A stretch of DNA of 64,000 nt, taken from Mobula hypostoma (Eukaryota). The notes beneath the pieces were generated by a model. That model was not told the DNA's origin and made no database searches. It saw only the letters and a list, made by a program, of their open reading frames with translations. Below are positions 15,001-63,700 of this stretch, piece after piece (the first letter of the stretch is position 1; each line of letters begins with the position of its first letter). Both the position numbers and the translations under genes were made by a program. The stretch is from assembly GCF_963921235.1 (NCBI RefSeq), contig NC_086128.1, positions 26,722,001 through 26,786,000 of the forward strand, in the 5' to 3' direction.

Positions 15001-17132
15001 GGTGCTCTCCTGATGGCGCATGGCTCGCCTTTGCTCAGATCAATGACACGCTGGTGCCCAAAATGGAGATACCTCACTATCTGGGCCAACTGTATCCCCG
15101 TGCTAAAATCTACCCCTATCCCAAGGTGGGTTAGTGCCCCTCAATCTCTGCCTCCCTCACATTGCCCCCTCCCTCTCTTTCTTCTCTCCCACTCTCCCTC
15201 CCTGTTTCTCTCACCTCCCCATTCCTCCCTTCTCTTTCTTCCACTCTCTCTCTCTATGTAACTCACTCTACTGCCCCTCTCCCACTACTTGGGTTTGACC
15301 CTGTGTTTTTTTTCCAGATGAGACAACCCCTTCCGTCTATCAGTCTCTTTGTGGTGAAGCTGTATGGACCAGCACACACCCTGCAGGTTCTCCCTCCCGA
15401 GGGCCTCCGGTTCAGGTAATCCCAGGCAGTGACATTAGTGGGGGAGCGGGAGCACAGGACTGATGGTGAATGATGCCTCCACATCGGGTTACAACAGTGG
15501 GGTGGGAAGAGAACAGTTACAGAACCAGGCTCCCCGAGATGAGTCTCCTCGGGCAGATTATCTGCATAGAGAGCAGGTCCACATTAGTCAACAGCCCCAG
15601 GGTGGAGGGAAGCCCCAGAGGAGGGTTATCCCAGTGTGGAGACCAGTTTTGTATTGGTAAACAGCTCTGGGGGAGGGGGAGGGGAGGTCAGTGTGGGTGT
15701 CAAAGTGTGATGACTATGTGACCCTCTCCCACAGTCAGTACTATCTCACCATGGTCTCCTGGGTGTCCAACACCAGTCTGGCAGTACGATGGTTAAACCG
15801 AGCCCAGAACGTTTCCCTCCTCACTGGGTGTGAGGTGACCACAGGGGCTTGTGTGGAGGTGAGATCCTCATCATCCACCCTCCATTTCCCTATTCCTCAT
15901 ATCCCTCCATCTGTCTCCGTCACTTACCTTCCCTCCATCTACCCATCCCTCATCTCCCTCCACTTGAACACCATCTGAACTGATTCCACACTCTGTGGGT
16001 CACTTTCAGGAACTCTACAACTCATGTTCCCAATATTTATTTATTTATTACTATTATTATGTTTCTCGTTTTTGTCTTTGCATTATTTGTTGTCTTTTGC
16101 ACACTGGTTGTCAATCCTGTCGAGTGCAGTCTTTCATTGATTCTATTGTGTTTCTTGTATTTACTGTGAATGCCCACAAGAAAATGTATCTCAGGCTGTA
16201 TATGATGACATATATGTACTTCGATAATAAATATACTTTACTTTGAACCTCCCCATCCCTCAACTCCCTCCATCTCCCTGTCCCTCATCCTCCTCCATCT
16301 CTTCATCCCTTACTCACACCCACAACTTTCTACCTGAGTTTATTGACATATCTCTCTGCCTTTTACAGAAGCACAAGACATCATCAGATGGCTGGCTGAG
16401 TAAACAGGTGAGCCTCCTGAGAATTCAGAAAGCAGTTCGGAATTATTTCTGTCACTAAAGGAATTTGCAGGTTGTTAGAGTCTGTCAGACTGTGAGACCA
16501 GTATTATTATTACTCTGGTGCTGGCAGGCAGGGAACTGATCAGGGGTGATGCTCCTTACAATCCATAGCAAGCAGCGATGCAGGGTGGTCTATGGTCCAG
16601 AGGTTCATTTTGCAGTGGGACGGGCTGGGACTGTAGTATTGGAGGTGTTAGGTAGCCCTCTGCCTCCTGGCTGAGTGAGTGTGAAGGAGTCCCAGGCCCC
16701 AACTGACTGACCATCTCTCTCTCCTGCAGGGTGAACAGCTGCTCTTCAGTCCAGACGGCAGCACCTTCTTCCTCACTGTGCCCACCCAACAAGGGGGTGC
16801 CGGGCGGTTCTGGCACTTGGCCAGGTTCACAGACAGGGTAAGGCAGGACACATTGTCTGGATAGCGTCTGCAGTTACCCTAGAGACAATCCCTGGTCATC
16901 TTCATTACCTCTGTCTCTCCCTCCTCCTCTCTCTGTCCTCTCCCTCCCTCACAATCCCTGTCACTCACCCTCCCATTCCCTGTCTTTGCCCCTCTCTCAC
17001 TCATTCTGTCCCACCTCCCTCCCTCTCACTCTTCCTCTCCCTCAACCTCACCCTCCCTCATTCTGCCTCCGCTAATCTCCCACCTCCTCACTCTCTCCCA
17101 CCCAGAGCCCATACCCGAACTGTCCCTCGCCC

Positions 17133-17176
<44 letters not shown>

Positions 17177-39798: not shown

Positions 39799-41348
39799 AT
39801 GGAATTTGGCGTCTCGGCTCTGAGTGTGAATTGAGGGAGAGGAGAGAGGGGCTGTGTCTCGGATTCAGCACAGCAAGATGCCGGTGGAATTCGCTAAATC
39901 ACGTTCCACACATAGCGCAGACGTGCAGCTCAACGTCTGGTACACTCCCGGCTCACACCTTCGACTCCCATTCTCAGAAACTCTGTCCCAACAAACCAGA
40001 AAGGTAACACACAACGATACCGACAATAGACGGCGACACCAACACCAACAGAACAGCCTGTGTGTAACTCACTGCTGGCCTAACAGCGACACCCACGGGC
40101 GATACGGTCTGTATGGCCTCAACTGCCGCCCATAGTTGATTTTGTTACTGTCTGTGGGAACCAGCTGTGCATCAATCGGCCGTTCCCTTTCCCCACCATC
40201 CCGCCCCGTCGACTGTAAACAATTAGTCTTTTCCCAAACTACCAGCGTTGTTATCCACTCCCCTTGGTGAAATGATCTGCATGGATGGTGTGCCTCGATA
40301 CATGCCCAATAATAAAGTAATTTACCAATTTACAAAAGTTTTACTCTGCGCAAAGTTTACTCGGGAGGGAGGGGGAAGAACTGCAAGATTTGGCGTTACG
40401 CCGGACGACACAGGAGGGCTGAAATGGCTTCGTTCCACTGAGCGGGGACAGCACTGAAGCGAATGGGTTGAGGGCATCTTCCGAACCTTCATTTACCCCC
40501 TGCAACTACCACTTGCCCACGTAGAACTAGATGCCACGTTGGAGGGAGGGGAGGTCCTGGATACGAGGACCCTACCTCAGACGGCTGACCAACGAACAGC
40601 CTGTTGCAAGCATCAGTAGGGGAAGATCTCTTCCACTGCAAATCTGCCATCGCCACAGCTCTGGGGTACTCGCTGCTATTTTACCGGGGGGGAGGGAGAA
40701 AAGGAACCACCGACCCTTGTTTCCTGGGCAGTAACGCACTGGACCGCAGGTCTGTCTGCACCGGGAGCAGGCGGATGTTTCCAACATCTGGGAGCCATGT
40801 AGCATGTACCGAGCGTGAAACCGACAGGAACTCCGGTACCTCGCACCTACCATTGAGGTCCGCTGGGAAGTGTAACTGTCCGTAAACAGCCGGGCAAAAA
40901 AAAACCACCCCTGAACTTTGGTTTGGTTGGTCTTTTACGATTGTTTCGCGGAGTAGTTTGCTGGTGATGTTGCAGTTACTCCAGCCTCTGCAGGGTTTCC
41001 TTACCGTTAGTTTGGTATCGAGTTAGTTGCATTCGCCTATTGCACATTGTTACTTTGTATTGCAGTCAGTGTTGTTGCACTCACTATCATATTTGCCTGT
41101 TAGAGTTTGCTACTTTGTTGCACTCCCGTGCTGCAGTAGCATTCAGTATTGGTTCAGTGTTTTCTGTGAAGCGATGTTGCTATTTGTGAAGTTAGCCCTG
41201 GGATTTGTGAAGTTAGCTCCATCTCTCGGTGTTACGGAGTTCAAGGACCGAGAGCGCGCCTGTGAACTCCCACCCGCTGTAGGAGGGAATGGAGCGTCGT
41301 TGTAACGGCCTGTCCTGTCTTCCCGGTGCAGGGCCCGGACTGGACGTG

Positions 41349-41436
41349 ATGCCGATCTCCGTCTACCTGATCCTGGTCTTCGGCTCCCTCTGGGGGCCCG
41401 GCTTGGCCAGGAGATCGGCCGACCTGTATTGTGGAG
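41349..41436 (+). CDS. CNPY2: CNPY2 first coding exon
   Basis: MPISVYLILVFGSLWGPGLARRSADLYCG|gtgag; upstream acceptor at 41330-41331. Confidence 0.9.
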
Positions 41437-44400
41437 GTGAGCGACTCCACTCCCAACAAGGGGGTGGAAGAGAGGGATAGTAGAGAATTGAAAGGAGTAG
41501 AGACGAGGATGGTAGGGAGAGGGGGAGGGAGGGGTTTGGGCGGAGAGGGTTGTGGGGGGAGGGTGTGTGGGGCGGGGGAGAGACAACCATTCTTACCCCG
41601 AAGGTGTGAAGGCTCTTACCCTACTTTTGATCTGAGGTGCTGCAGCCCAGGGTGTGGGTGGGAGAAACATAGACCCTGGGTGACCAAACACAACCCATTT
41701 CCGACTCTCCAAACCTCTCTGCAGTCTGCAGGGCGCTGGTGGACGAGATGGAGTGGGAGATCTCCAGGGTGAATCCGCAGAGGATGGTGGAAACCGGAAC
41801 ATTCCGCCTGGACCCCGAGGGCAGCCCCGTGGTCACACAGGTAGGTATGGACGGGGCGTTTGCTCACAGCGCTGCATGCCCCACTTCCCCTACAACCTCC
41901 CCCAACCCTCCCTCCGCTCCATCTCCACCCCTTTCCCACCGATGGGGATTGTTTTGGGGTGGTGATGGTGTGTCGGTGTGCGGAGGATATAGAAGAATCT
42001 CACTGACTTCTTTCTCGCTTCCCCCTCTATCTGCCTCTGTCCTTTCCCTGACTCCTCGCTCTTTTCCCACTTCAGGTCCCATACAGGCATTCCGAGGAGT
42101 TCCTGTTGGAGCTTCTAGCGAGGGTGTGCGAACGGATGCTCGAGTATGGTGAACGGACGGACCCTGGCACCCTGCGGCAGACCTACCACCGGGTAGTGAC
42201 CCGGGAAGGGCACAGGGTCCCGGCCCCCGACACTCGCACCACCCAGCACGTCACCTCCAGTTTAAAGCAGGCGGTGGGTGACAGGGATGGGGGGGGGGAG
42301 AGAATGGTTGTGAGTGGACGGAGCAGTTGTTATCTGGCAGTGTGGGGCAGGGTTTAGCAAAGGGGGCAGAGAAGTGAGGGGAGGGAGCGGAGGGTGAGCG
42401 GGGAAGTTGAGCTGTGTGGGTGGGGGTGTTAGAGATGAGGGAGCAAGTAAAGGGAAAAAGGGTGGGGGAGGATGGAAGGGAGGGTACGTAATTTAAGGTG
42501 GTAGGGGAGGAAGGAAAGGTTTGCGGGGGAGGGAGAGTTATTATCGTCACCTGTACTAGTGAAAATCTTGTCTTGCATACTGTTCATACAGATCAGATCA
42601 TTACACAGTAGAACAAGGTAACAATGCAGAATAAAATGTAACGGTTATGTATACCTTAACAAAATAGGTTGTGAGGTCTGGAGTCCATCTTATGGTACAA
42701 CAGGTTCATTTGCTGGCAGTTTGGCAGGGGAGGGGAGCATCACTCTGGCAAGGTGTGTAATGGTACCCAGCCCACAGAATGCTCATCTCCCACCCTCGCC
42801 CTTACCCTGTCCCTTCCTCTTGCAGTGTGAGAAACTTGTTGAAGAATATGAGGATGAGTTCATTGAGTTCTTCTCCCGTGAGTCTAACAACGTGAAGGAC
42901 CGACTGTGCAGTAAACGGACAGGTGAGTCCCTCAGCTCACTCCTCCTCCATCAGATTACCAACAGTCCATGAACACTATTTTGCCGCCTTCTTACACATT
43001 CTTATAATTTGTAGTAATTTTGTCTTGCTCTGTATTGCTGCCACAAAACAAATTTCAGAATATGCATTCAGTGGCCACTTTATTACATACATCTGTACAC
43101 CAGCTCTTTAATACAAATATCTAATCAGCCAATCATGTGGCAGCAACTCAATGCATAAACACATGCAGACCTGGTCAAGAGGTTCAGTTGTTCAGACCAA
43201 ACATCAGAATGGGGAAGAAATGTGATCTAAGTGACTTGCCAGACAGGGTGGTTTGAGTATCTTGGAAACTGCTGATCTCCTGGGATTTTCATGCACAACA
43301 GTCTTTGGTGTTTACAGAGGATGGTGAGACATATAAAAAGCATCCAGTAAGCGGCAGCTCTGTGGGTGAAAATGCCTCGTTTATGAGAGGTTGGAGGAGA
43401 ATGGCCAGACCGGTTCAAACTGACAGTAACTCAAATAACTATGCATTACAACAGTGGTGTGCAGAAGAGCATGTCTGAACATGCAATACATTGAACCTTG
43501 AAGTTGACAGGCTACAACAGCAAAAGGCCACACCGGGTTCCACTCCTGTATCTAATAAAGTGGCTACTGAGTGTATATCAGTGATAACAAACGTGATTCT
43601 GCCTCTCTCATTCAGTGTTTCTCCATCCCTCTTCTTCTCCTCCCTCCCTGAACCTGGGTCTTTGCACCTACCCTCCTCCTCCCTCCCACGTTAGAAAACC
43701 AGAACAGAATGTGCAACCAACAAGGCAGGTAGATCATAACTGGTTTGCCCTACAGCAACCCAATCAATCCATTAGGCTCAGGGTTAGAAAGTTTATGGAT
43801 GACACCACTAAACAGATTCCATGACCTATTGTCAGTAATAATAAACCTGATTTTTAAGTATGTGTTGGACCAGAACTGAACACAATACTCTTTAAGTGTG
43901 GTCTAACCAGAGTTTTGCAGAGCTGCAACATTACCTCACAGCTCTTGAACCCAACACCCCCTCTCCCCCCAAACTAATGAAGGCCAACACCTCATAGGCC
44001 TTCTTAACCAGTCTTGAGCATCTGTGGGAAACACCTGGGAACGTGCAGACTCCATGCACAGGCAGTGCCAGAGGCTGAGATTGATCCTGGGTCACTGGAG
44101 CTGTGAACCAGCAGCTTCACCAGCTGTGCTGCCAATGTGTTCAAGGGGGAAGATAAACACCAGGTGGAGCCGGTCACTTCCGGAAGTCACAGCTGTGGGA
44201 TGCATTGTGGCCATTGAGAGGGCAGACAGGTTGTCAATTTAACAGCTCATCTGAAAGACCAGTCCTAATGCTGGGCCATGATTGTAACATTGCACCTGAA
44301 TGAAGGTTAGCATAGTGACCACCGACTCGAGTCCCCAGCATCGACCCTTATCCTTCTGTGACCCTTTTGCGGATGACACAACACCCCTCTGAGTGATCTC

Positions 44401-44786
44401 AGCACAAACAATGATCTGTGCAAATTTACTGATGGGTACCTTGTCCGGGGCAGCATGGTAGTGCAATGCTTTACAGAGTGAACAATTGATAGATCATCAT
44501 TCAATTCCCTCTGCTGTTTGTAAGGAGTTTGTACGTTCTCCCTGTGACTGTGTGGGTTTCCTCCACGTGCTTCAGTTTCCTCCCAAATTCCAAAGATGAA
44601 CAGTTAGGGTTAGTAAGTTGTGAACACGCTATGTAGATGCTGGAAGCATGAAGACAGTTGTAGGCTGCCCTCAGCACATGCTCGGACTGTGTTGGTCGTT
44701 GACACAATGACATATTTCACTGTTTGCATTGATTTTCCACAGATCTTTGTGACCATGCACTCCACATCCACCATGATGAGCTCTGA
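41349..44786 (+). CDS. CNPY2: Protein canopy homolog 2 (saposin-like ER protein), 180 aa, spliced
   Basis: join(41349-41436,41725-41840,42076-42273,42826-42922,44743-44786) = 543 nt. Signal peptide then ARRSADLYCGVCRALVDEMEWEI...CEKLVEEYEDEFIEFFSRESNNVKDRLCSKRTDLCDHALHIHHDEL*. Six saposin Cys, HDEL retention signal, and a CNPY2-type C-terminus. Confidence 0.94.
41725..41840 (+). CDS. CNPY2: CNPY2 coding exon 2
   Basis: VCRALVDEMEWEISRVNPQRMVETGTFRLDPEGSPVVTQ. Confidence 0.94.
42076..42273 (+). CDS. CNPY2: CNPY2 coding exon 3
   Basis: VPYRHSEEFLLELLARVCERMLEYGERTDPGTLRQTYHRVVTREG...SSLKQA. Confidence 0.93.
42826..42922 (+). CDS. CNPY2: CNPY2 coding exon 4
   Basis: CEKLVEEYEDEFIEFFSRESNNVKDRLCSKRT. 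Confidence 0.95.
43065..43573 (+). mobile_element. Internally deleted non-autonomous Tc1-like element (~510 bp)
   Basis: Inverted ends CATTCAGTGGCCACTTTATTA / TAATAAAGTGGCTACTGAGTG followed by TA; residual transposase start MGKKCDLSD at ~43209; interrupts a LINE 3' tail. Confidence 0.85.
44447..44735 (+). mobile_element. tRNA-derived SINE abutting the last CNPY2 exon
   Basis: Same head, core and tail (ggctgccctcagcacatgctcggactg) as 33001-33280. Confidence 0.8.
44743..44786 (+). CDS. CNPY2: CNPY2 last coding exon
   Basis: DLCDHALHIHHDEL* (TGA). Confidence 0.95.
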
Positions 44787-45203: not shown

Positions 45204-45975
45204 GGGGTCAGACACAGAGTGAATCTCCATCCACACCATCCCATCACACACTGCCAGGGTCAGACACAGAGTGAATCTCCCTCCGCACCGTCCCATTACA
45301 CACTCCCAGGGTCAGACACAGAGTGAAGCTCCCTGCACACTGTCCCATCACACACTCCCAGGGTCAGACTGAGAATGAATCTCCCTCCTCACTGTCCCAA
45401 CACCGACTCCCGGGGTCAGACAGACAGTGAATCTCACTCCACACTGTCCCATCACACACTCACAGGATCAGACACAGAGTGAATCTCCCTGCACACTGTC
45501 CCATCACACACCCCCAGGGTCAGACACAGAGCGAATCTCCGTCCACACCATCCCATCACACACTCCCAGGGTCAGACACAGAGTGAAGCTCCCTCCTCAC
45601 TGTCCCATCACACACTCCCAGGGTCAGACACAGAGTGAATCTCCCTCCACACCGTCCTATCACACACCCCCAGGGTCAGACACAGAGTGAATCTCCCTCC
45701 ACACTATCCCATCACACACTCCCAGGGTCAGACACGGAGTGAATCTCCCTCCACACTGTCCCATCACACACTCCCAGGGTCAGACACAGAGTGAATCTCC
45801 CTCCACACCATCCCATCACACACTCCCAGGGTCAGACACAGAGTGAATCTCCCTCCACACTATCCCATCACACACTCCCAGGGTCAGACACACAGTGAAT
45901 CTCCCTCCTTACTGTCCCATCACACAGTCACAGGGTCAGACACAGAGTGAATCTCCCTCCACACCGTCCCATCAC
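45204..45975 (-). repeat. 52-bp minisatellite array (~15 units), inverted, between the CNPY2 and MOB4 3' ends
   Basis: Reverse complement of the same unit. Confidence 0.96.
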
Positions 45976-46623
45976 ATGATCCACAAATGGCAAAGCAGCA
46001 ACACTGACCAGAGGAGTTAATACAGTTTGTTGTTTTTTTTTAAAACATCGAGAAGACAAAGAACAGAGCAATGATAACTTTACATAAATAACTGAACACG
46101 TCAGGTACTAGGCGAGGCTAGCACTGGTAAAATGGTCATTAATTAGGGAGGGAGTGAATCAGCTGAGAGGGGAGGGGTTTACACTGATTACCATCTCAGC
46201 TCTGTGTCAGAGTGCGGGTTGGCACGTTAATCCTCATGTTAACACGATTGGATAAGAACAGTGGCAGTCGTTCAATCAGCATCTGCAGTGAGAGAATCCG
46301 GTCTGAGGACATCAGTCCTCTGCCCACAGACGCTGCCTGACCTGATGAGTTTTTTCTCGAACATCATTCTCTGGAGACAATGAGGCTGCAAGGAGGGAGT
46401 CGGGGTCCCTGTGGAATGGAGAGGGGAGTCTAATTCTGCTTCAATGTTCATTGATCTAGGCAAAAAAATGGGATAATGGGTCTGTGCTATTGAAAGGGGA
46501 CAACACAGATTTGGGTGAGATGAAAAAGGGTCTCCCCATGGGTGAACAGGGGCCTCACGGTGGTTAGCAGATGGGGGGGGGGGGAGAGAAGAGGGTAGAT
46601 GTGCTGGTGGGATTGCCCTGGAC

Positions 46624-46755
46624 TTAGGCCTCACTCTCTCCAGCTGTGGTGTTCTGCACCTCCTCTTCCAGGATGGGAACAATGAGGTTGTCCTTGGACA
46701 TCAGGTTGTACTTGATCACAAACTTGGTGAATCGGTGACACAGGAAGGTCTCATT
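46624..46755 (-). CDS. MOB4: MOB4 exon 8
   Basis: [43 protein letters not shown]. Confidence 0.96.
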
Positions 46756-49700
46756 CTGTAGTGGGGATGTAGGAGGGATGGTAATTAGAGACATCAGGCA
46801 GTACAAACCCCACCCAGCCATAGTACCACCGCTAGAACCTACTCCCCACAGCACCACCAGCTGATCACATTAGCCCTAGGCAGTGTGAGGGAGGAACAGG
46901 GCATGATTTGACATCCCCACACTGGAAAGAATAGGGGTAGCCCACTCGGCCTCTTACACCTAGCCCCATTCGTGCGCTCAGCACCACCGTCCTGCACCAG
47001 TAACTCTGTTCCCTTTGACTTTAACCTACTGGTGGAGATAGCTCCACCTTGTTACCTACTCCTCAGGGCCTGATGTCTTATAGATCTCTTCTCATCCTTC
47101 TATGCACAACACAGTTTCTTTAGCTGCTTCCTCAAAACCCCTTCCCTCCACTGCAGTGTGTACCGTCTACAACACAACTCTCTCCCCCCACCACAAGTAC
47201 TCCCTCCCTTCACCATCATCTACAGAACCCACTGCGGTCACTTGCCCCACCTATTCCAACAGCCCCTTCCAAACCTCCCCACCTCTCCCCAACTTGGAAG
47301 AGAAACACTATACTCTGGAGGTTCTGTGGAATTCATTGCCACAGATGGGTGTGGAGGCCATATCATTGGGTATATTTAAAGCAGAGGTTGATAGGTTCTT
47401 GATTAGTCATGGCAGCAAAGGCTACAGGGAGAAGAGAGAAGAATGGGGTTCAGAGGGATAATGCATCAGCCATGATTGAATGGTGAAGCACTCGATGGGT
47501 CAAATGACCTAATTCTGGTCCTCTATTGATGGGATGAGGCAGAATAACAGTTTGGCATGTACTAGATGGGTTGAAGGGTCTGTAGTACGCTACAGCAGAG
47601 AAACATCTCAGTTGTGGAGTGAACACACTTACAAGGTGGGGGTGTGTAAGGGAGATCTGTAAACACACACAGAGTGGGGAATGGATAAGGGGAGATCTAT
47701 GTCTTATGGACGTTGCCCCTTCCTACACCATCAGATTGAAATAAATTGACTGTCTTGCCTGTTTATATCCTGGGAAATCCCTCTTCGACAGCGCTATGGG
47801 AGCACCCTTACCATATGACCCCCTTCCTGGCTTTCCTGAGGGACCCGTAGGGAGGGACAATAAATGCCGGTCAAACCAGACACACTAAAGATAAAGACAT
47901 TCCCCATCATCTAAACAAAAATGGAGCAGGTCAGAGGATATGGGGACTTCATCTCCTGTTCCCATCCTCTTTCCCGCCAACAGTGTGATGACTCACCTCG
48001 TAATCGTCGAAGATCTGGCGGTGGTGGAAGTAGGCGTGGGAGAAGATGCGGTAAATCCTGCGACAGACGGAGCCCAGCTTGGCCACGGAGGATTCCTTAA
48101 TGCTGACTCTATGGGGCCGAGGACAGTACTGTCAGCGTTCCAGGGCAGATCACTGGGTGGCAGGGGGGAGCCGGGGACAAGTAGAGTGTGGATTATAGGA
48201 GGGAAAGATGGATTGGGTGGGAGTGTGGGGCTCAGAGACGGGTAGGTAGGACAGGACCACAGCCACCAGACACACAGGGAGGGGGGGGATGGAGTGTGGG
48301 GACTGTATGGGTAGTGAGTTGGGGACCAAATGCACACACAAGGTGGGGGTGTGTAAGAGAGATCTATAAACACACACACAGAACTCCCAGGTACGATGGG
48401 CTCTCCATGGGGAGAGTATGCAAGGATCAGGGATGTGGAGCTGGGGTTTTATAGGTCAGGGGTTCAAAGGTTAGGGTGCATGACCCTTGTCACCTGATCC
48501 TCAATGCTGGGGTCAGGGACACTGATCTGGTTCATTGATGAAAAGGGTCTCCCCGTGGATGAAGTGGGGGGACCTCCCCTGGCCGACTGGAGCAGGTGAG
48601 AGTCCGCAGAGCCAGGTACCTACCTGCTGGGAAAGTACTTGTTACTGTTGAGCAAGCAGGCAGCTCCATCCAGAGTGTGTCTCGTGTAGTCAATAGCAGG
48701 GCACTGAAAGCAGAGATCACAGTAAGTGGAGGGGAGGGAAAGTGGCAGGGTAGAGAGTGAGGGAGAAGATGTTGGGGGGAGACCACAGTGAAGAGGGATG
48801 GAGGGAAGTGGAGAGGGTGGTGAAAAGGGGAAGGAGGGGAGAAGGAGGGACAGAGCACTGAAGGGGGATGGGGAAGGGGAGAGGAGAGGGAGAGAGCGAT
48901 GAAGGGAAAGGGAGAGCAGTGGGAGGGGAGAGGCTGAGCAATGTGGTTGAGGGAGGGAGAGCATGGTGAAGTGGAAGGGAATGGTGGGGAAAGGGAGAAC
49001 AGTGGGTGAAAGTGAGGGGGAGAGAGGGGTTGATGGCAATAAAGTTCTTGTGCACAAATTACTTTTAGGCAGCCAGTTCCTGGTTGGGAAGGTATGTTGG
49101 AAGTTCAGAAATATGGAGTTTTGGGTAAAGCCACAGCTGCAGTAGGGTGTATAGTTTGGGTCCTCTGAATTAAGGACACACTGTCACTGGAGGCAGTCCT
49201 AAGAAGATATATTGGGCTAATTCCTGGGACCAGAAGGTTGTCCCATCAGAAGGGGGTGGACAGCTCGGGTCTGTATTCCTGTGGAGTGTAAAGGAACGAG
49301 GGAGTACTTTATTCCAACACTTGGACCCCAAGGGGAGGTGATGTGAGATGTGGGAGAGTCTTAAACGAGTAGACAGTTACAGGGTTGGGGACGGGCATTT
49401 AACACTGACACTGTGGGAACTACTCTCAGAGGGAGGAAATTGTCTGCTCCTCCCCAGAGAGAGTGGAGGCCCGATCACTGAGGGGGGATGTAAAGAGATG
49501 GGAGATAAATGTTTAAAAGATGGCTGGGAGGAGATTATGGGCTGTTGGGAACAAAAGGGTGGATAAGGCCTGGGGTACCGAATGGTGGGACAGGATAAAG
49601 GAACTGAGTGACAGTTCCTATCGCCTCCCCATCTCCCCATATCAACAGCTTCAGGTTACTGCACCGGGGAAATCCACCCCCGCTCAAGTCTCTCCCATCT

Positions 49701-52700
49701 CTCCCTGTAACCGCAATGTTCCTACATCCTGGCATCACTGGAACTGGAGTTGGTGCTCCAGCGCAGGTGCTCTGACTGGAGTTATGCAACAGGCCCTTTG
49801 GCCCATTGAGACCTTGTGATCATCAAGTATCCACATTCCCTGGCCCCCTTTTAAATCACCATATTTCCTTACATCATGAAGGAGGCCATTTCAGCCTATC
49901 GGGCCCCAGTTTCATGACCCAGTCTCCTGTTCCTTCAGGGATGGGACTGTGGATTTCAGGAGGTGCCTCTGCAGGAGAGCTCGGTCAGGGCAGGAGGAAA
50001 GTTGGTGGGCGGTGGGGGGGTGGAGGAGTGGTTGGGCTACCGTTCAATCAGTGAGGGAGTGGGTCAACCAGAGACCTGTGGCTGCTTCACCCGCCAGGGA
50101 ACACTCGTCTCAGCAGAACACTTCTCCCACCCATCCCCCGGTGGCAACAGGCCTGCCCACCTCCTTCGGGGTCTTGTGTGCGGCACACAGGAAGATCCAC
50201 TGCTCTGTCGCCGTCATCTGGGTGCAGGTGTCAGAATGGCACTCGCTCTACAGAGAGGACACAGAAAGACAGGTCACATCACCGGGACACATTTGAGTGA
50301 GGGACAGAGAAAGAGAGAGAGAGAAACAGGACATGTTACTGGGACATGCTGGCAGGAGACAAGAGTCAAAGAAACACGTGACATGGAGCGCAGACAGGAC
50401 AGAGACACACAGACAGAGTGAGCATGACAAAGACGCACATGCACACAGAGGGGGGAGAAGGGGGAGTGAACATGAGACGCACAGCCCTGCAGATAAAGTT
50501 AAAAAGTAGTCGATGCTCTGTCTTAGGGGAGCTCATCATCCTTGAACCTTGCTGAGGAGTTAACTTACTTGTAGTTTCACAGCCAAGTCGTTCAGTTCCA
50601 AGCAAAACTGCCTGAAATAAAACCCAAGTTCATTGTTTATTAGGTTGAGGCAAACACTTGAACATAACCTTCCAATGTGAACACATCATCACTATCCCGT
50701 TCTTGGCATCCTTTACGTTTAGCACCCATTTTAAAATTCTCATCAACTGTCTGGAAATACTGACTCAGCACCATCCTATTTCTGTGACCCTCTAGAGCTC
50801 TCACATCCCTCCTCCACTATTTCTGCCTCTGTCATCAGTGGTCATTCAGCTGCATGCACACCAACCAGATTTATTTCCCTCCCCACTGAGGACTGGGTGA
50901 GAGCATGGCTGAAGGGCTGGGCGAGTGTGAGAGTCTAGATGAGAGTGAGGGACAGGGAAAGGGTGAAGTACAGGTGGGACAGAAAGAGCAGGGCACAGGG
51001 GAGTGGAACTCAGTCGCTCAAATGGCCAGCACACTCCCATTGGTGCTCAGTGTTAACAATCGGAGGCACCGTAGATGGCAGATGCTGGAACACGAAGCAA
51101 CACAGCAGAATCAGGAGGAACTCACTGGACCAGGGGTCAGAATTGAACAGCAGATGTTTGTGGACAAGACCCTTCACTCACATGAATTGGCCCTTCAATG
51201 CTGAAGAGTCCATTGCTGATGTTGCCTTACCTACTTAGTTCCTTGTATTGCTATAAATGGATGAGATTTTAATTTAGATGTCTGTGGGCACACACCAATG
51301 GAAGTGGTGGGTCAGACTACATCCACTTCACTACCCCTACACCCTTCCCCAACCCCGACTCTGCCTTGGGCCACTATGATCCCAGCAAGACCCTCACCGG
51401 AGATGCTCATATTTCCAGACGCCCTCATCCTGCCCCTCCGGTGGTTCCAGGATCTTCTCGATGTCCGATGCGTCATCGCGGATGCTCTGCTGGATGTACT
51501 ATGCGTGGAGGGGGAAAGGGGGGGGTGGAGAGTGGGGGGAGTGATGGGTGAGGGGAGGGCAGGAAGAGAGAGAGAGAGAAGGGGGTTGATTCTGGGATTG
51601 AAAGGCTTATCATATCAGGAGCTCTGGGTTTTTACTCTGGAATTCAGAAATATTACGTGGTGGGGGGTTGTTCTCATTGAAACCTGCCGAATGTTGAAAG
51701 GCCTCGATAAAGTGGATGTATCCTAAGACATAGGAACTGAATTTGGCCATCCAGCCCATCAAGTCCACTCCACCATTTCATCATGGCTGATCCTGGATCC
51801 CATTCAACCCCATACACCTACCTTGGCATATCCCCTTTAACTTCTACAAATTTTTATCAATGCACCATAGGAAGCATTTTATAAAGATGCACCACAGCTT
51901 GGTACAGCAACTGCTCTGCCCATGACTGCAAGAAACTGCAGAGAGTTACAGATAGAGCTCAAAACATCACAGGAACCAGCCTCCCCTCCATGGACTCTGT
52001 CTGTGCTTCTTGTTGCCTCAGTAAAGCTGCCAGGATAATCAAACAGCCCACCCACCCCAGACATTCTCTCTTCTACCTCCCATCAGGAGAAACACGTACC
52101 ACTAGGCTCAAAGACAGATTCTATCCCACGGTTATAAGGCTCTTAGATGGACCTCTTGTATGACCAGTTTCACTTTATTCTTTATTGTTATAGTTTTACC
52201 TCAATGCTTCTGTGTAATGATCTGATCTGTATGAACAGTACCCAATCGGAGGCACCGTAGATGGCAGATGCTAGAACACGAAGCAACACGGGAGAATCAG
52301 GAGGAACTCACTGGACCAGGAGTGAAAGACAAGCATTTCACTCTTGGTACATGTGACAATAATAAACCAATTTCACTTTCTTCAACTCTCCTGCTGGTGG
52401 TAACATCTCCATTTCTACCCTGTAATGTCCACTCGGGATCCGAATTCGTAATTTGGTTTATTATTGTCACTTGTACATACCAAGATGAAATATACAACTT
52501 GTTCTGCGTGATATCCATACAGATAATTTCAAGACACAAGTACACTGACGTAGTACAAGTGAAAAGGAATAACCGAATGCAGAATAAAGTGTTACAGAGA
52601 AAGTGCAGTACAGGCAGACAATAAGGTGTAAGGTCACAATGAGGTAGATTGTGAAGTCAAGTGTGAAGGTCACTGGAACAGGTTTATTCTTGTCGCATGT

Positions 52701-54831
52701 ACTGTGATACAGTGAAAAGCTTGTCTTCCATACTGTTCATACAGATCAAATCATTACACAGTGTGTTGAGGTAGAACAAGGTAAAACAATGACAGAATGC
52801 AGAATGTAGAGGTCAAAAGGCCATCTTAGAGAACAGTTTAACGTCCTACTAACAGTGGAGTAGAAACTGTCCTTCAACCTGGTGGTGCGTGCTTTCAGGA
52901 TTTTGTATCTTCTGTCCGATGGGAGAGGGGTGAAGAAAAGAGAATGTCCGGTGTGGGTGGGGTCTTTGGTGACGTTGGCAGCTTTACTGAGGCAGTGGGA
53001 AGTGTAGACAGAGTCCATGGAGGGGAGACTGGTTTCTGTGATGTGCTGAGCTGTGTCCACAACTCTCTGCAGTTTCTTGTGGTCACAGGCAGAGCAGTTG
53101 CTGTACCAAGCTGTAATCCAGACAGGATGCTTTCTATGGCGCATCGATAAAAATTGGTAAGGGTTGGTGGGAAATGCTGAATTTTTTTAGCCTTCTAAGG
53201 AAGTAGAGGGTCAGGACAGGCTATTGACCAACTCTTTTGTTTAACTAATACTGAGGGAAAGGTTGATGTCAGAACACCACGCCACTAGGCTATCTCCTTC
53301 CTGTACTCCAATGCATCCTTATTTGATATGTGGCACACTACAGTGGTATCATCTGCAAACATGTACATGGAGCTAGAGCAGAATCTGGTCATGCAGTCAC
53401 AAGATTAGTGAGGGGTCATTTAACACTGAGGTATGTAAGGACTTCTGCTACAGACAGTGGGGGAAATCGCTGGAATTCTCTGCCCTCAAGGGTTGTGGAG
53501 GCCTGATCACAGGTGTAATTTAAATAAGAGCTTTAGGTTTAGCAATGCAGTCGGAACACCACTTCCACGCTGCGGTTTTCACACACTGGTCACTGGTGTT
53601 CCAATGCTCAGGAACCTTGAACAGAGTGCAGGGCGACTCTGGACGTACTCACCTGCTGCACAGCCAGGGTGCTGTCCATCTCATCCAATGACTCATTAGG
53701 CCAGTTGTAGAAGTCCTAGAGGATGGAGTGAAGCAAAACTGTAGGTGAGGAGGCTGGCCCAGTGATCAATCGGTAGCATAGAAGCCAGTATAATGCTTTA
53801 CAGTGCCAACTACTAGGGTTCAATTCTGCCACTGTCTGTAAGAAGTTTGTGACTGCGTGGGTTTCCTCCCACATTCCAAAGATGTATGACGTATGAGTTA
53901 GGGTTAGTAATGCTGTGGGAATGCTATGTTGGCATGAACCCACAGGGGGAGGAAGCAGAGGGATTAATGGAGAGCAAAAAAGGTGTGAAGGAGGATGTGG
54001 GGGCAGGGAGCTCCAACTAGAGAGGTTGGGAATACTAAACAAGGAAAGGGACTGCAAGCAAGACAGCATAACTGGGGTAGTGTAATGAGGGCATGGGGAA
54101 GTTACTGGAGGGGTCAAGTGAGTGAGGGTGTAGGGATGATGTGGATGAGATCAGGGGTGTGGTGATGGAGTAGGAAAATAGTGAATGGGGTGAAGAAGGT
54201 GATGGTCATGCGGGTAAATAGGATGATGAGGGGCAATGGCAACAAGGGGGTGGGGGTTGGAGGAGCAAATGTGGTGAAGTTGAGGAGGGATGACGGTGAC
54301 AGGTGTAATTAGAGGGGGTGAAGGTGGGATGGGAATTTGTAAGGGTGGGACTGAAAGAGGGAAGGTGATGGGGGATGGAGGGACTGACGTGATGGGGTTG
54401 AGAAGGGGTGATGGTGACGGGAGCGATAAGGGGTTCAGAGATGTGGGAGCGATTAGAGAAGAGGGGAGATGATGATGGTGAAGAGGGTGATGAGGAAGAT
54501 TAATGGAGAGACGAAGGGAAGGGGCCGGGTGTGTGATGGACGGTCCTCACATCCAATCGGTAGGGCGCCATCTCTAAACCCGCAAATGGCGAGCGGAGGG
54601 TGGGAACATCCTGTGGCGACCCAACCAATCAGCACGGAACCGGGGCCCCGTGCCCCTGAATTAGGGCGGATACCCTCGGACTCCTCACATTGGGTTTCTT
54701 TCTCCCTCTCCCTCCCCCCTCAGATCCTGGGCGGGGATCACTTGCCGCTTAGCACCTCCGACTGTCCCCCAGCTCCTCACCTGGGCTTTAGTGCCTGGCC
54801 TGTTTCTCCTCAGCAAGACGGTGGCCGCCAT
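46624..54831 (-). CDS. MOB4: MOB-like protein phocein (MOB4 family, STRIPAK component), 222 aa, 8 exons; probably a paralogue
   Basis: complement(join(54781-54831,53653-53715,51398-51498,50569-50611,50161-50247,48624-48703,47997-48108,46624-46755)) = 669 nt. [42 protein letters not shown]...[16 protein letters not shown]...[56 protein letters not shown]...[14 protein letters not shown]. Confidence 0.96.
47997..48108 (-). CDS. MOB4: MOB4 exon 7
   Basis: [37 protein letters not shown]. Confidence 0.96.
48624..48703 (-). CDS. MOB4: MOB4 exon 6
   Basis: [27 protein letters not shown]. Confidence 0.96.
50161..50247 (-). CDS. MOB4: MOB4 exon 5
   Basis: [29 protein letters not shown]. Confidence 0.96.
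50569..50611 (-). CDS. MOB4: MOB4 exon 4
   Basis: [14 protein letters not shown], 43 nt. Confidence 0.95.
51398..51498 (-). CDS. MOB4: MOB4 exon 3
   Basis: [34 protein letters not shown]. Confidence 0.96.
51583..53400. mobile_element. Mixed CR1 and Rex1/Babar LINE fragments in MOB4 intron 2
   Basis: [15 protein letters not shown] (+); Rex fragments on + (51840-52375) and - (52440-53400). Confidence 0.75.
53653..53715 (-). CDS. MOB4: MOB4 exon 2
   Basis: [21 protein letters not shown]. Confidence 0.96.
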
Positions 54832-59660: not shown

Positions 59661-60259
59661 GTGTCCCTTTAAATTAGAGCATGCTGAATATTTCCAGCAG
59701 TTGTCTCAATACTTTACCAAGGTCATTACAGTACCTCAGTGTCTGAGGAGAACCATGGCTTATGATGCAAATCCTTTAAAGTTAACAGGAATCACCCAGA
59801 TGATGGTTTCATTGCAAACTGAAGATTTTAGACTTATAAAATACATAATTTCGAGTTCAGTTAAACCAGGGTCAAACCAGTGAAGCAAACGAGTAACAGA
59901 CTAAGCCCAGGCCACTCTATTGATGTTGTGCTATCCCTCAAGGATATTAATTTAATTCCTAATTATTTCAGGATATTAGTATGAATTATATAATGCACTT
60001 CTTAATACATTGAAATGAGATAATCAAATGATGTCTCATTTTATTGCATTATTTAAGACGTATAAAGTCAGTTTTATGTAATATATTTGGAAACGTTATG
60101 TTCTGTATTAATATATTTAAATATGATTGTAAATCGTCAGATTAACTGCATTTTTTCATTGCTTTATACAATGCATGTGTCTTAAAATACGTGTCGTTTG
60201 TGCTTTGGGAAAATTTAATATTTATTAGCTTTCTCAATTTAGGGAAATAATATGCTAGC

Positions 60260-60790
60260 TGTCTGATTGACGAGCAGAAAGCCAATGAGGGGGCGGAAGG
60301 CCGACGGACCTGGCCATTAGAGAGCGGGATAGAGGAGGCAGGCCATATACGCCCCCTGAGTAGTGGTCCAGCAATTAGCGTGATGAGTATGGGCAGGTCA
60401 TTCACGACCATCGCCCGGTAGCAGCGCACGGGACGGTCATGCCATCGTCATCCTGTGGAGTGGCTCCTCCCTTCTGTGCGCAGGCGTGTTGAGCGGTGAC
60501 GCGAATGCCGTCTCTCTCCTTCTCGGCACCGTAAGACCTTTCAACCTTGTGGCTGACTACTGAGCATCATGTCTCTGCTGGCAGCGAACAGAGCGGCGGC
60601 CATGCTGCTGCGGAGCGCCAAGGTGAGGCGGTGCGTTCCGGCTTCCCGAACAGGGGAGGTGGGCAGCCGGGTGAGCGTGGGGACCGACGGCGTGGCGGGG
60701 CGGGCATCAGGCTTCGGTTTGACCACTAGGCCGCGGTCGCCCGGTTGCCATGGAGTTGGGGAGTCCGTCTGCGAGGTGTGAGCAACTGAG
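60260..60790 (+). promoter_or_regulatory. CpG-island promoter of CS
   Basis: CCAAT 60282-60286, GC-box GGGGCGG 60290-60296, NRF1-like TGCGCAGGCGTG 60477-60488; abrupt switch from AT-rich to CpG-rich sequence. Confidence 0.7.
60569..60622 (+). CDS. CS: Citrate synthase, mitochondrial, coding exon 1 (start of transit peptide); gene continues beyond the window
   Basis: atcATG MSLLAANRAAAMLLRSAK|gtgagg. Resembles vertebrate CS exon 1 (human MALLTAAARLLGTK, ending in K at a phase-0 intron). Lies in a CpG island, and CS is the downstream neighbour of CNPY2 in the same orientation in human. Confidence 0.8.
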
Positions 60791-63700
60791 TGGGTTTTTT
60801 GAGTTTGTCGGGGGTGGGGTGGGTGGGAAATAGATGGTGTAGTTAGGTGTAGGTTCCGAGGATGGAGAGATGGAGGTGTGTGGGGTGGGTGATAGGGGGG
60901 GAGAAGGGTGGATGTGAAACAGGGCTCGGTGGAGCTTGAGAGTGAGGGGATGGAAATGGGAGTGAGAATGTGGGCTATAGAAGGCAGGTTGGTGAGGTGT
61001 AGAGGGCAAGGTAAAGGATTGGGTAGTGTTAAAGGTTGAGTGGGCATAAAATGAGGGTAAAGGGAGGTGAGGACGGATGTGAGTGTAAGGCCAGGGGAGA
61101 TGAGAAGGGAAAAATTAGATGGAAGAGGTATGGGTGTAAGTTGTGCAGGAAGGGTTGCAGGACAGGGCCCAAGCGAGAGATTGAGGGTATATGATTAGGG
61201 TGATGGGTGCCATTCAAGGGTGGGGGTAATGGTGGCGGGGTTACTGGATGGAAGCTGGTAGCTGAAGTCCAGCCTTATTCTAGGGGCCACCTGCCAATCC
61301 CTGTACCCTACAACACTCGAGTAACCAACCCCTTTTAACGCAATCAGACCCCTGGGTCTTTTGATACTCTCTTCCCATATGGCCACATAATTGATCCCCT
61401 CTGAGGCTTTCAACACCCTCCTGCCTGTGAACAGCATCTGGCCTTGACGTGCATGGGGTTGTTGGTGTTGAGGGAATATCCCAATTTCATGTTATTCCTG
61501 AAGTAAAATATTTTGGGGGCCTTATCAAAATGTATTCAAATTCTAAACGGCATGAGTGATTAGTGTAGGTTACAGTCCAAGCTGTATATTTGGCAGGTTA
61601 AAAGAACATTTCAGACCAGAGCTATTTTATGTTCTAGTAACACTAGACTGGGGATGTATGAGTTAATATGCACTTACTGTATAGAGATACTGTAGACAAG
61701 GTCATGTACAATAACTGAGTGTTGGGAACAAAGAGACCTTGGAGTAAATGTCCAAAGGTAACATTACAGCTAGATAATGTGGTTAGAAGGGCACATGCAA
61801 AGCTTTTTATCATTGTTTCTGGACTACTGTGACTGCACTGGAGAGGGCAAGGGAGAGATAAGAGTGTTGCCAACACTGGAGAATGCTAGCTCTGAGGAAA
61901 TATTTGAGGTTGGCTCTGGAACAGAGTCAGCTAAGGGATGTGGAAAGTCTGATTGGGAAAGACTGTTTCCCTTGGAAGGGGGTCAAAGGTCAGGGAGCTG
62001 AGGTTTAAACAAAGGTGGAAGGGTGAGTGGAGGAGAATTGTTCTCCCTCAGGGAGTTTGTTGCCTTGAACTAATAGTGGAGGCAGAAACATTTCCCCACT
62101 TTTAAGCAGGACATTCCTGGTCAGCATAATGATGGGCTGAATGGTTGTCTCTCATGTTATGAGCTTTCCCTGCTGGTGTCATTAATGCTGGTTATCTTCT
62201 GTGGACCAAGCAACATCAGGTTCAAGGTTAATGTAACACCCCTACAGCTTCATTGTCCCTATGTATAATGACAATAATGACAATAAATGCTGGGTGGTTA
62301 CTCAATTCAATTCAGTAACCTCCCAGCATTGGTCTGTCCACCACATTTGGCAAACAATTCACGAAACTGATTTTGGCAAATGTGGCACCAGTAATGGTGT
62401 CCATGTCTCTGTAGTCCCCAGGGCAGGGACCTGTCTCAGGATGGCGGGTCTGAATGCACCAACCCATGGTAGAGTGTTGTTAGCTAATGCTGCATGTATG
62501 GTGTTGTCAAGCAAGACCAAAAGGGTAATGATGTTTGTGGCGTTTTTATAGAACCCAGAGCAGTACAGCACAAGGACAGGCCCTTTGGCCCCAATGTTAT
62601 GACGAACTAATTAAACATTAAACTAAATCCTTCTGCCTACACAAGTGCATGTCTCTCCATTCTCTGCGCATTCATGTGCCTATCTAAGAGACTTTTAAAT
62701 GCCTCTATTGTATTTGCCTCCAGCACCACCCCTGGCAGTGCATTCCAAGCACCCACCACTGTTTTAAAAAAAATTTTTAAAAATAATTTGTATATCTTTT
62801 AACTTGCCACCTCTCACTTGAAGTGGCAGTGGAAGCAGGTTTAGTGGTGGCTTTATAATGTAACTGGATAAGTACTGGAGAGATTTGCAGAGGCATTTGA
62901 AGACAGGATGAAGCAAATTGGATGGGTTCTCCAGTGTGGTGAATCGTTGCCTTCTGTATAGTCTGTTATTGTGGAAGTTCATCTCTCTCACTGGTGGGAC
63001 ACCTCTATCTTTTCCTGCTTGGAAAAGAGAAGGTTGAATTACGTTCTAGTGAATAGGTTCTGATGGACAGCTACAGTTAACAAAGTACTTTTGGGGGGGG
63101 TGATTGTGAGGAGGGGGAGGGCATGCTGAGATAAACGAGAGAGCAGCTTAAAACTAGTTCCAGACAACAGCACCATGAATTGAAATCTGAAATCAACTGC
63201 CAACTGATTTCAAAGCAATGAAACATTCCTGCACTGTATTTGAGGGGCTCCCTGTAGCAGCTCCCATGAGTTACTTGACAGCAATTTACAAGAAACTCAC
63301 CAGCCTTCCTCTCGTACTTTCCAAGTTTCCCGCTGCTATCTTGGCTATAATTTACTTTACCAGCATCTTGGCATCACTGGTAAGGTAAGCATTTGTTGCC
63401 GTCAAAGGTGAAGGTGGGCTGCCTTGCACCTTTGCAGTCTTTGAGGTGATTGTGCTCCTCACTACACTGTTGCAGAGAGTGTTCCCTGACCTACTGATGA
63501 AGCAGCAACAAAGCTTCCCAATCAGCAGAGCATCAGGCTTAGAGGGAACTTGCAGGTGGTTGTGTCCTTGTGTGATGAATATTCTTGTCCTCAGCGGTAG
63601 AGGCTGTGGGTTTGTGAAGTGCTGTCGAGTAGCCTGGATGAATAATAGCTGTGCATTTTGTAGATAACATTCACTGTTGCCAAGGTGCGTCAGTAATGGA

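What the first reader, a model, noticed from the sequence alone, without database searches (positions are those of the whole stretch)
46624..54831. A second, diverged MOB4/phocein between CNPY2 and CS
Seen: intact 8-exon gene with the zinc-ligand Cys/His motifs kept, but a shorter N-terminus and about a dozen substitutions versus human ([32 protein letters not shown]). Known: MOB4 is single-copy and highly conserved in mammals, near COQ10B/HSPD1/HSPE1 on 2q33, whereas CS and CNPY2 are adjacent near COQ10A on 12q13. Inference: this is the sister duplicate lost in mammals, implying an alternative STRIPAK/MST-kinase adaptor. The conserved introns exclude a retrocopy.
Basis: partly seen in the sequence, partly recalled or inferred. 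Interest (0 to 1): 0.75.

Follow-up and report, generated by a model that had tools for sequence, protein, structure and literature searches.

The report
Shark-and-ray MOB4 gene beside CNPY2
This is an intact, expressed MOB4/phocein gene of a stingray. RefSeq already lists it as that species' MOB4, but in sharks and rays it sits next to CNPY2 instead of HSPE1 and carries a dozen lineage-wide changes, so it may be an old duplicate that replaced the usual copy rather than an extra one.

Summary
An 8-exon, all GT-AG, 222-aa MOB4 gene lies on the minus strand at 46624-54831, tail-to-tail with CNPY2. Contigs of three small runs from the source species, RNA by inference, join exons 8 to 3 exactly at my splice sites; the DNA run does not.

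Whale shark MOB4 (XP_048474922.1) shares 12 of the 14 differences from the human-type core. It also lies tail-to-tail with CNPY2, so the diverged form and the position are elasmobranch-wide. Ray versus shark dN/dS is 0.02.

In bony vertebrates MOB4 lies next to HSPE1, shown by Cpn10-Mob fusions and by paddlefish HSPD1-HSPE1-MOB4-RFTN2.

"Second copy" is not shown:
- No canonical MOB4 appeared in the RNA or DNA contigs of the species, though that test is weak.
- Both elasmobranch MOB4 proteins I could sample are of this type.
- I could not inspect the HSPE1 neighbourhood of any shark or ray.

My odds: about 0.5 that it is the HoxC-paralogon ohnologue and the only elasmobranch MOB4 (reciprocal loss), 0.25 a relocated orthologue, 0.15 a true second copy.

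CS is represented in the window only by a putative first exon.

The parts
54781..54831 (-). MOB4 exon 1 (start codon, [17 protein letters not shown])
   Evidence: The N-terminus is identical to RefSeq XP_072927382.1 (P0327). It lies in a GC-rich, CpG-enriched stretch.
53653..53715 (-). MOB4 exon 2 (21 aa, skipped in RefSeq isoform X2)
   Evidence: with AG/GT borders. It is homologous to whale shark exon 2 at about 81-82% nt identity. It was not inside the stretch laid with reads.
51398..51498 (-). MOB4 exon 3 (carries [11 protein letters not shown])
   Evidence: The joint 50610/51397 (cut +1) is in three RNA runs.
50569..50611 (-). MOB4 exon 4 (carries LNDL)
   Evidence: The joints 50247/50569 and 50610/51397 are in the RNA runs only.
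50161..50247 (-). MOB4 exon 5 (carries ECHSDTC, two zinc-ligand Cys)
48624..48703 (-). MOB4 exon 6
   Evidence: The joints 48108/48624 and 48703/50161 are.
47997..48108 (-). MOB4 exon 7 (CRRIYR basic patch, SHAYFHH zinc-ligand His)
   Evidence: Pfam Mob1_phocein E 7.6e-6. It is 94% nt-identical to whale shark.
46624..46755 (-). MOB4 exon 8 with stop codon (FVIK, NTTAG)
   Evidence: The joint 46755/47997 is.
46012..46623 (-). MOB4 3' UTR, at least about 610 nt
   Evidence: RNA contigs run on from exon 8 through 46050 and about 38 nt further (records 9, 17, 24). Four small runs of organism A hold all sampled words of 46050-46760.
41330..44786 (+). CNPY2 (canopy family), convergent with MOB4
   Evidence: Exon translations are. 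Pfam DUF3456 E 7.8e-8. The last exon ends ...HHDEL* at 44786. Two of its exons are conserved downstream of whale shark MOB4 on the opposite strand.
45205..45976 (.). 52-nt tandem array (14.8 copies) between the two 3' ends
   Evidence: Related arrays lie at about 4.7-8 kb of the window and inside and just after whale shark MOB4.
60569..60622 (+). Candidate first exon of citrate synthase (presequence-like, 18 aa, GT donor)
   Evidence: The sequence pattern and the CpG island are the only evidence; no homology test was possible.

Best explanation
This is the MOB4/phocein gene of a stingray, either the red stingray Hemitrygon akajei or a very close relative. It most likely does what MOB4 does elsewhere. 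That is, it acts as the core Mob-fold subunit of the STRIPAK phosphatase-kinase complex, binding striatin and STRIP and docking phosphorylated GCKIII/MST kinases through its basic patch.

What is unusual is its history. In sharks and rays the gene lies between CNPY2 and (probably) CS, in the 12q13/HoxC-type paralogon. All sampled bony vertebrates keep MOB4 next to HSPE1/HSPD1, in the 2q33/HoxD-type paralogon.

I read it as the HoxC-side duplicate from the early vertebrate genome duplications. It picked up about a dozen changes while it was redundant. It then became the only MOB4 of elasmobranchs when the HSPE1-side copy was lost, while bony vertebrates lost this one (reciprocal loss, or 'hidden paralogy').

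Shown: the gene, its splicing and transcription, its identity with the RefSeq product, its position in ray and shark, and purifying selection. Inferred: STRIPAK function, ohnology and single-copy status.
For: Gene and transcripts:
- Spliced contigs occur in three small runs of the source organism, read as RNA, and not in the DNA run.
- The 3' UTR and exon 8 are fully held by four small runs of the source organism and partly by related species.

Identity and sharing with sharks:
- The protein minus exon 2 equals XP_072927382.1 [Hemitrygon akajei].
- Whale shark XP_048474922.1 shares 12 of the 14 substitutions and has CNPY2 exons tail-to-tail downstream.

Selection and rate:
- Ray versus whale shark: dN 0.024, dS 1.16, omega 0.02.
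- In the tree the elasmobranch pair has a stem of 0.082 changes per site (support 100/99). Its tips are 0.001 and 0.037, and the median end branch is 0.039. This indicates a burst followed by strong constraint.
- None of about 250 other MOB4 sequences fetched, from cnidarians to mammals, has NESL, LNDL, CHSD, SIRDD or NTTAG.

Position in other vertebrates:
- Bony vertebrates show Cpn10+Mob fusion products in mammals, birds, reptiles, frogs, sturgeons and teleosts. Paddlefish has the order HSPD1-HSPE1-MOB4-Raftlin.
- From the human map (own knowledge): COQ10B-HSPD1-HSPE1-MOB4 on 2q33.1 against COQ10A-CS-CNPY2 on 12q13.3. MOB4 is thus two genes from a COQ10 paralogue in both.
- Another agent's note, which I did not check, reports a third DPP6/DPP10-type gene lost in mammals in the same window.

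Copy number:
- Exon-bin depth in the RNA runs X11 and X26 is fully accounted for by this gene's own contig. No second MOB4-like transcript was laid at 80% likeness or more.
Against: - Single-copy status is not demonstrated. I could not obtain any shark or ray HSPE1/HSPD1 locus.
- The read test has low power. Exact seeds between ray exons and a canonical MOB4 are only 8-23 nt long at 80-86% identity.
- The vertebrate backbone of the protein tree is a polytomy, so it cannot separate orthology from 2R paralogy.
- COQ10A and the body of CS lie outside the window, and the whale shark flank on that side is a run of N.
- The burst of substitutions has another possible cause. The red stingray genome paper reports elasmobranch-unique substitutions and long branches for HoxC genes, in a repeat-rich, GC-rich region on a sex chromosome (bioRxiv 10.1101/2025.06.08.657570). 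A regional rate effect could therefore mimic post-duplication relaxation.
Confidence: 0.5

Rival explanations
1. Relocated orthologue. There was only ever one MOB4 in jawed vertebrates. It moved between the HSPE1 neighbourhood and the CNPY2-CS neighbourhood, either on the elasmobranch stem or, in reverse, on the bony-vertebrate stem. The elasmobranch gene is then the plain orthologue of human MOB4.
For: - RefSeq names it simply MOB-like protein phocein.
- No second copy was seen.
- The tree is compatible with the species tree.
- Amphioxus MOB4 neighbours (GCSH, a WD40 gene, a COMM-domain gene) support neither vertebrate neighbourhood as ancestral.
- Fast evolution of HoxC-linked DNA in elasmobranchs could explain the substitutions without any duplicate.
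Against: - A random move would have to land within two genes of the paralogue (COQ10A) of the gene (COQ10B) that flanks MOB4's neighbourhood in bony vertebrates. That is a very small target. This rests on the human map (own knowledge), not tested in the ray.
- The same window holds another gene reported as an ohnologue lost in mammals.
Confidence: 0.25
2. One reading: a true second MOB4. Elasmobranchs keep both the HSPE1-linked canonical gene and this CNPY2-linked duplicate, and this one has diverged towards a modified partner set within or outside STRIPAK.
For: - The long stem branch followed by strong constraint is the pattern expected of an asymmetrically diverging duplicate.
- Changes hit positions invariant from sea urchin to human: G80D in LNGL, P91S between the two zinc-ligand cysteines, F27L.
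- The HSPE1 side was never inspected in an elasmobranch.
Against: - Both elasmobranch MOB4 proteins sampled from the protein collection are of the window's type, and none is canonical.
- No elasmobranch Cpn10-Mob fusion product was among the roughly 45 fusion clusters listed or among the cluster members I could see.
- MOB4 is broadly expressed in other vertebrates, yet no second MOB4-like contig was laid on any of exons 3-8 in the RNA runs X11 and X26 (X10 checked at exons 7-8), nor on exons 5 and 8 in the 2.5-gigabase DNA run.
- The gene itself is transcribed at good depth in all three samples, as a housekeeping MOB4 would be.
Confidence: 0.15
3. A lineage-specific DNA-level duplicate of an elasmobranch MOB4 that happened to insert beside CNPY2.
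For: The introns are retained, so a segmental copy is mechanically possible.
Against: - The position and substitutions are shared by a ray and an orectolobiform shark, so any such event predates the elasmobranch crown.
- It would again need a parent copy, for which there is no sign.
Confidence: 0.04

Closest known systems
Human MOB4/phocein (PDB 7k36 chain H in STRIPAK; 5yf4 chain A, MOB4)
   Same: - Mob1/phocein fold family.
- 93% identity over the 205-aa core.
- The same 8-exon structure.
- Zinc-ligand Cys/His motifs and the RRxxR basic patch are kept.
   Different: - 14 substitutions, several at sites invariant across animals (G80D, P91S, F27L, and the N43S/A46D/C48A/N50D/D52E cluster).
- The N-terminus is 3 aa shorter.
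- It lies beside CNPY2, not HSPE1.
Whale shark MOB-like protein phocein XP_048474922.1 and red stingray isoform X2 XP_072927382.1
   Same: - The stingray entry is identical to the window's product apart from the skipped exon 2.
- The whale shark protein is also 222 aa, shares 12 of the 14 derived residues, and has the same tail-to-tail CNPY2 neighbour.
   Different: The whale shark differs at 8 residues, mostly in the acidic C-terminal tail.
Extra teleost MOB4 copies (Merluccius polli KAK0149274.1, Lampris incognitus P0172)
   Same: They are diverged MOB4 genes lying away from HSPE1.
   Different: - They sit beside beta/gamma-crystallin genes.
- They group with teleost MOB4 in the tree.
- They lack the elasmobranch substitutions apart from a few coincidences (QQSIR and FVIK in Lampris).
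- They are probably teleost-specific duplicates of the 2q33-type region.
Third DPP6/DPP10-type gene in the same window
   Same: It is reported as an old vertebrate duplicate kept in rays and lost in mammals, in the same CNPY2 neighbourhood.
   Different: That gene is said to survive in many bony vertebrates as well. No bony vertebrate among about 120 MOB4 clusters showed a CNPY2-type MOB4. I did not test that note.

Membership tests
MOB4/phocein (class IV Mob) | Mob1/phocein domain (Pfam PF03637) | tested here: met
   Exons 3, 5, 6 and 7 each hit PF03637 at successive profile positions. Each is below the whole-protein cut-off because it is a single exon. The whale shark full-length counterpart carries PF03637.
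MOB4/phocein (class IV Mob) | Closest to MOB4 rather than MOB1/2/3 | tested here: met
   92-93% identity to vertebrate MOB4 and 80-83% to invertebrate MOB4. The only PDB hits for exon 8 are MOB4 chains.
MOB4/phocein (class IV Mob) | Zinc-ligand Cys-x5-Cys and His-x4-His motifs and the basic phosphopeptide-binding patch | tested here: met
   ECHSDTC, SHAYFHH and CRRIYR are present. Assigning them to zinc and phosphopeptide binding rests on Mob1/MOB4 structures recalled from the literature.
MOB4/phocein (class IV Mob) | Conserved exon-intron structure | tested here: met
   Exon borders coincide with whale shark, paddlefish and teleost genes.
MOB4/phocein (class IV Mob) | Binds striatin and STRIP within STRIPAK and docks GCKIII/MST kinases | not testable with these tools
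2R ohnologue of MOB4 (HoxC-paralogon copy) | Lies in the region paralogous to the MOB4 region of bony vertebrates | tested here: inconclusive
   CNPY2 is adjacent in ray and whale shark, and TMBIM6 lies just upstream (note). CS is only a candidate first exon. COQ10A is outside the window. The paralogy of 12q13 and 2q33 is taken from established knowledge.
2R ohnologue of MOB4 (HoxC-paralogon copy) | Gene tree splits it from HSPE1-linked MOB4 before the cartilaginous/bony fish split | tested here: inconclusive
   The elasmobranch pair is a well-supported long branch, but the vertebrate backbone is unresolved.
'Second' MOB4 of the genome | A canonical MOB4 co-exists in the same genome | tested here: inconclusive
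   None was laid on the exons checked from RNA or DNA contigs at 80% likeness or more, but the test is insensitive. No elasmobranch HSPE1 locus was obtained.

The most novel reading that the evidence does not exclude
Sharks and rays carry two MOB4 genes: a canonical one beside HSPE1 and this CNPY2-linked ohnologue. The ohnologue's invariant-site changes (G80D, P91S, F27L and the N-terminal acidic cluster) would then retune which striatin, STRIP or kinase partners it binds. That would give elasmobranchs a second flavour of STRIPAK that bony vertebrates lost.
Probability: 0.13. Interest if true: 0.6.

Novelty: new member of a known kind. Interest (0 to 1): 0.33.

Why it matters
MOB4 is treated as a strictly single-copy, one-to-one orthologous core subunit of STRIPAK across animals.

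If the elasmobranch gene is the other 2R duplicate, then "MOB4" of sharks and rays and "MOB4" of bony vertebrates are paralogues that look like orthologues. That would matter in three ways:
- It would be a clean case of reciprocal ohnologue loss in an essential, dosage-sensitive gene.
- It would caution against using such genes as orthology or phylogeny markers.
- It would be a natural experiment showing which otherwise invariant MOB4 residues can change while the protein stays under strong constraint.

If it is only a relocated orthologue, the finding is ordinary.

Tried and rejected
- **Full-length searches left out.** The spliced 222-aa product has no reference, so I did not type it into any search. 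I worked from single exons and from P0287 and P0327.
- **Exon 8 against the 50%-identity representatives.** This returned only fragments and fusions; none was of the window's type.
- **Human-type core against the 90%-identity clusters.** No elasmobranch name appeared among the 120 clusters listed. The clusters proved looser than 90%, and the shark and ray entries were hidden inside clusters headed by a hake and a cod protein.
- **Exon-8 ORF with its intron-derived leader.** I hoped to find Logan ORFs of the same species and then a second exon-8 type in the same sample. The window's own ORF is not in the collection.
- **HSPE1 profile search and cluster sampling.** The aim was a shark or ray HSPE1 locus. 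No elasmobranch entry surfaced, so the decisive neighbourhood was never seen.
- **Amphioxus MOB4 neighbours.** Uninformative.
- **P0040.** This diverged FVIK-type fragment sits on a 1.9-kb contig of unknown origin beside an Alba-domain gene, so I dropped it.
- **Earlier findings of the scan.** No note mentions HSPD1, HSPE1, COQ10B, RFTN2 or another MOB4 in this genome. Only a small part of the genome has notes, so this says little.
- **Structure papers for 7K36 and 5YF4.** Neither is held, so I could not map the substitutions onto interfaces.
- **PDB.** It has no canopy-family match for CNPY2 exon 3.
- **Paralogue detection by read laying at 80% likeness.** Nothing was found, but canonical exons would be only 80-86% alike, with exact seeds of 8-23 nt. 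I count it as weak evidence only.
- **Complex and structure prediction.** No complex prediction was run because no partner sequences were available. No structure prediction was run because the fold is known and the tools would not give interface contacts.

Full report
**What is there**

On the minus strand between 46624 and 54831 lie eight open pieces. Joined at canonical AG/GT borders they give a 669-nt reading frame and a 222-residue protein.
- Exon 8 alone matches human MOB4 in the STRIPAK cryo-EM entry 7k36 (chain H) at 40 of 43 residues, E 2e-21.
- Four other exons hit successive parts of the Pfam Mob1/phocein profile.
- Against the human-type 205-residue core there are 14 substitutions, 93.2% identity, and the N-terminus is three residues shorter.
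- The Cys-x5-Cys and His-x4-His motifs and the CRRIYR basic patch are untouched. By homology with solved Mob proteins these hold the zinc and bind phosphopeptides.
- Exon borders fall at the same CDS positions as in whale shark, paddlefish and two teleost MOB4 genes. Amphioxus differs only by a fused exon 2/3. A retrocopy is excluded.

**It is transcribed and spliced as modelled**

Four small runs from the window's source organism hold every sampled word of the 3' UTR plus exon 8. The tool labels them only 'RNA?'; I read them as RNA because they are far too small to cover the genome as DNA.

I laid three of them and one DNA run on 46050-52049. Each RNA run has one contig (word depth 110-320) that joins 46755/47997, 48108/48624, 48703/50161, 50247/50569 and 50610/51397, with CT..AC ends (GT..AG on the gene's strand). 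The DNA run has none of these joints. Exons 1 and 2 lay outside the 6,000-letter limit. Exon 1 is confirmed by the RefSeq product below, and exon 2 by homology.

**Whose gene it is**

Sampling a protein cluster turned up XP_072927382.1, "MOB-like protein phocein isoform X2 [Hemitrygon akajei]", 201 aa. It is letter-for-letter the window's protein without exon 2.
- The window is therefore the red stingray or a very close relative.
- The gene is already annotated as that species' MOB4.

**The diverged form and the position are elasmobranch-wide**

The same sampling gave whale shark XP_048474922.1, also 222 aa.
- It shares 12 of the 14 substitutions (F27L, N43S, A46D, C48A, N50D, D52E, G80D, P91S, E177D, M193I, V216T, S217A) and differs from the ray at only 8 residues.
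- In its locus, two CNPY2 exons lie downstream of MOB4 on the opposite strand, as in the window.
- Between ray and shark dS is 1.16 and dN 0.024, so omega is 0.02. That is strong purifying selection.
- In a maximum-likelihood tree the two form a clade (100/99) on a stem of 0.082 changes per site. That is as long as the branch separating all invertebrate from all vertebrate MOB4s. The ray tip is 0.001.
- About a dozen changes, several at positions invariant from sea urchin to human, therefore accumulated before the shark-ray split. Almost nothing changed afterwards.

**Where MOB4 lies in other vertebrates**
- Products carrying both Cpn10 (HSPE1) and Mob domains are annotated in mammals, birds, turtles, crocodilians, snakes, frogs, sturgeons, paddlefish and many teleosts.
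- The paddlefish locus reads HSPD1, HSPE1-MOB4, Raftlin, the human 2q33.1 order.
- Two diverged teleost copies (hake, opah) lie beside crystallin genes and group with teleosts. They are unrelated to the elasmobranch form.
- Amphioxus neighbours are uninformative.

**Neighbours in the window**
- CNPY2 is secure. It hits DUF3456, ends in ...HHDEL*, and is conserved in whale shark.
- CS is not secure. No catalytic exon is in the window. There is only an 18-codon presequence-like first exon with a GT donor, in a CpG island at 60569.
- The whale shark flank on that side is a run of N, which I left as it is.
- TMBIM6 lies before the window, and a third DPP6/DPP10-type gene fills 2.9-38.8 kb according to earlier notes that I did not test.

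**Is it a second copy?**

This is the crux, and I could not settle it.

Against a second copy:
- Both elasmobranch MOB4 proteins I could see are of this type.
- No elasmobranch HSPE1-MOB4 fusion appears among the fusion clusters.
- In RNA runs X11 and X26 the depth over each of exons 3-8 equals what this gene's own contig contributes; in X10 the same holds for exons 7 and 8. Nothing else at least 80% alike was laid there. The same holds for the DNA run over exons 5 and 8.

Limits of these tests:
- A canonical paralogue would be only about 80-86% alike, with exact seeds of 8-23 nt. The read test is therefore weak.
- Cluster listings show only 15 members each.
- My attempts to reach a shark or ray HSPE1 locus failed.

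**Ohnologue or relocated orthologue?**

On the human map (own knowledge), COQ10B-HSPD1-HSPE1-MOB4 lies on 2q33.1, and COQ10A-CS-CNPY2 lies on 12q13.3, in the HoxD- and HoxC-linked paralogons.
- An elasmobranch MOB4 between CS and CNPY2 is thus two genes from a COQ10 paralogue, just as in bony vertebrates. That is what a retained duplicate predicts, and it would be a very improbable landing site for a random move.
- The pattern of a burst followed by constraint also fits a phase of redundancy that ended when the other copy was lost.
- There is a counterweight. The red stingray genome paper reports that elasmobranch HoxC genes lie in repeat-rich, GC-rich DNA on a sex chromosome and show unusual substitutions and long branches (10.1101/2025.06.08.657570). 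A regional rate effect could therefore explain the burst.
- The protein tree cannot decide.

**Verdict**

My odds are:
- 0.5: HoxC-side ohnologue that is now the only elasmobranch MOB4.
- 0.25: relocated orthologue.
- 0.15: true second copy.
- Remainder: other explanations.

The function is most likely the ordinary STRIPAK role. Nothing supports an "alternative adaptor". I found no paper describing this. The gene itself is in RefSeq, so the only novelty is the evolutionary reading.

Noticed in passing
window 45205-45976; also about 4700-8000; L003 10673-10935 and 17946-18055: A 52-nt tandem repeat (14.8 copies, 89% matches) fills the gap between the 3' ends of CNPY2 and MOB4. Related arrays occur elsewhere in the window. 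In whale shark they lie in MOB4 intron 1 and about 450 nt after its stop codon, at 68-80% identity. So an old elasmobranch satellite family, or a positionally conserved one, flanks this gene.
   Followed up: partly
L001 (Lampris incognitus) 10001-17852; L002 (Merluccius polli) 10001-15521: Two teleosts carry diverged MOB4 genes (82% and 91% identical to the human-type core) next to beta/gamma-crystallin genes rather than HSPE1. They are probably a teleost-specific duplicate of the 2q33-type region kept in some lineages.
   Followed up: partly
window 47997-48108 (MOB4 exon 7): Exon 7 is 94% nt-identical between ray and whale shark, while the other exons are 77-88% and overall dS is 1.16. This is fewer silent changes than expected, hinting at an extra constraint such as a splicing signal. 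The excess is not seen against paddlefish (83%).
   Followed up: no
window 60569-60622 (+), CpG island about 60000-61000: Candidate first exon of citrate synthase, head-to-head with MOB4 at 5.7 kb. Exon 2 is not within the remaining 3.4 kb of the window.
   Followed up: partly
   Followed up: no
window 8650-10100: A GC-rich minisatellite (63% GC, strong negative GC skew) is open in several frames on both strands ([10 protein letters not shown]... and [11 protein letters not shown]... repeats). It is not a gene as far as I can see.
   Followed up: no
window 47320-47490 and 51650-52050: Two intronic copies of a very abundant interspersed repeat, in opposite orientations. Contigs at 80-90% likeness pile up there to word depths of 10^4-10^5 in both the RNA and DNA runs, and create false 'joints' between the two sites.
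   Followed up: no
L003 1-5500: The whale shark flank upstream of MOB4 (the side where CS would lie) is a run of N in the stored locus. I left it unfilled.
   Followed up: no
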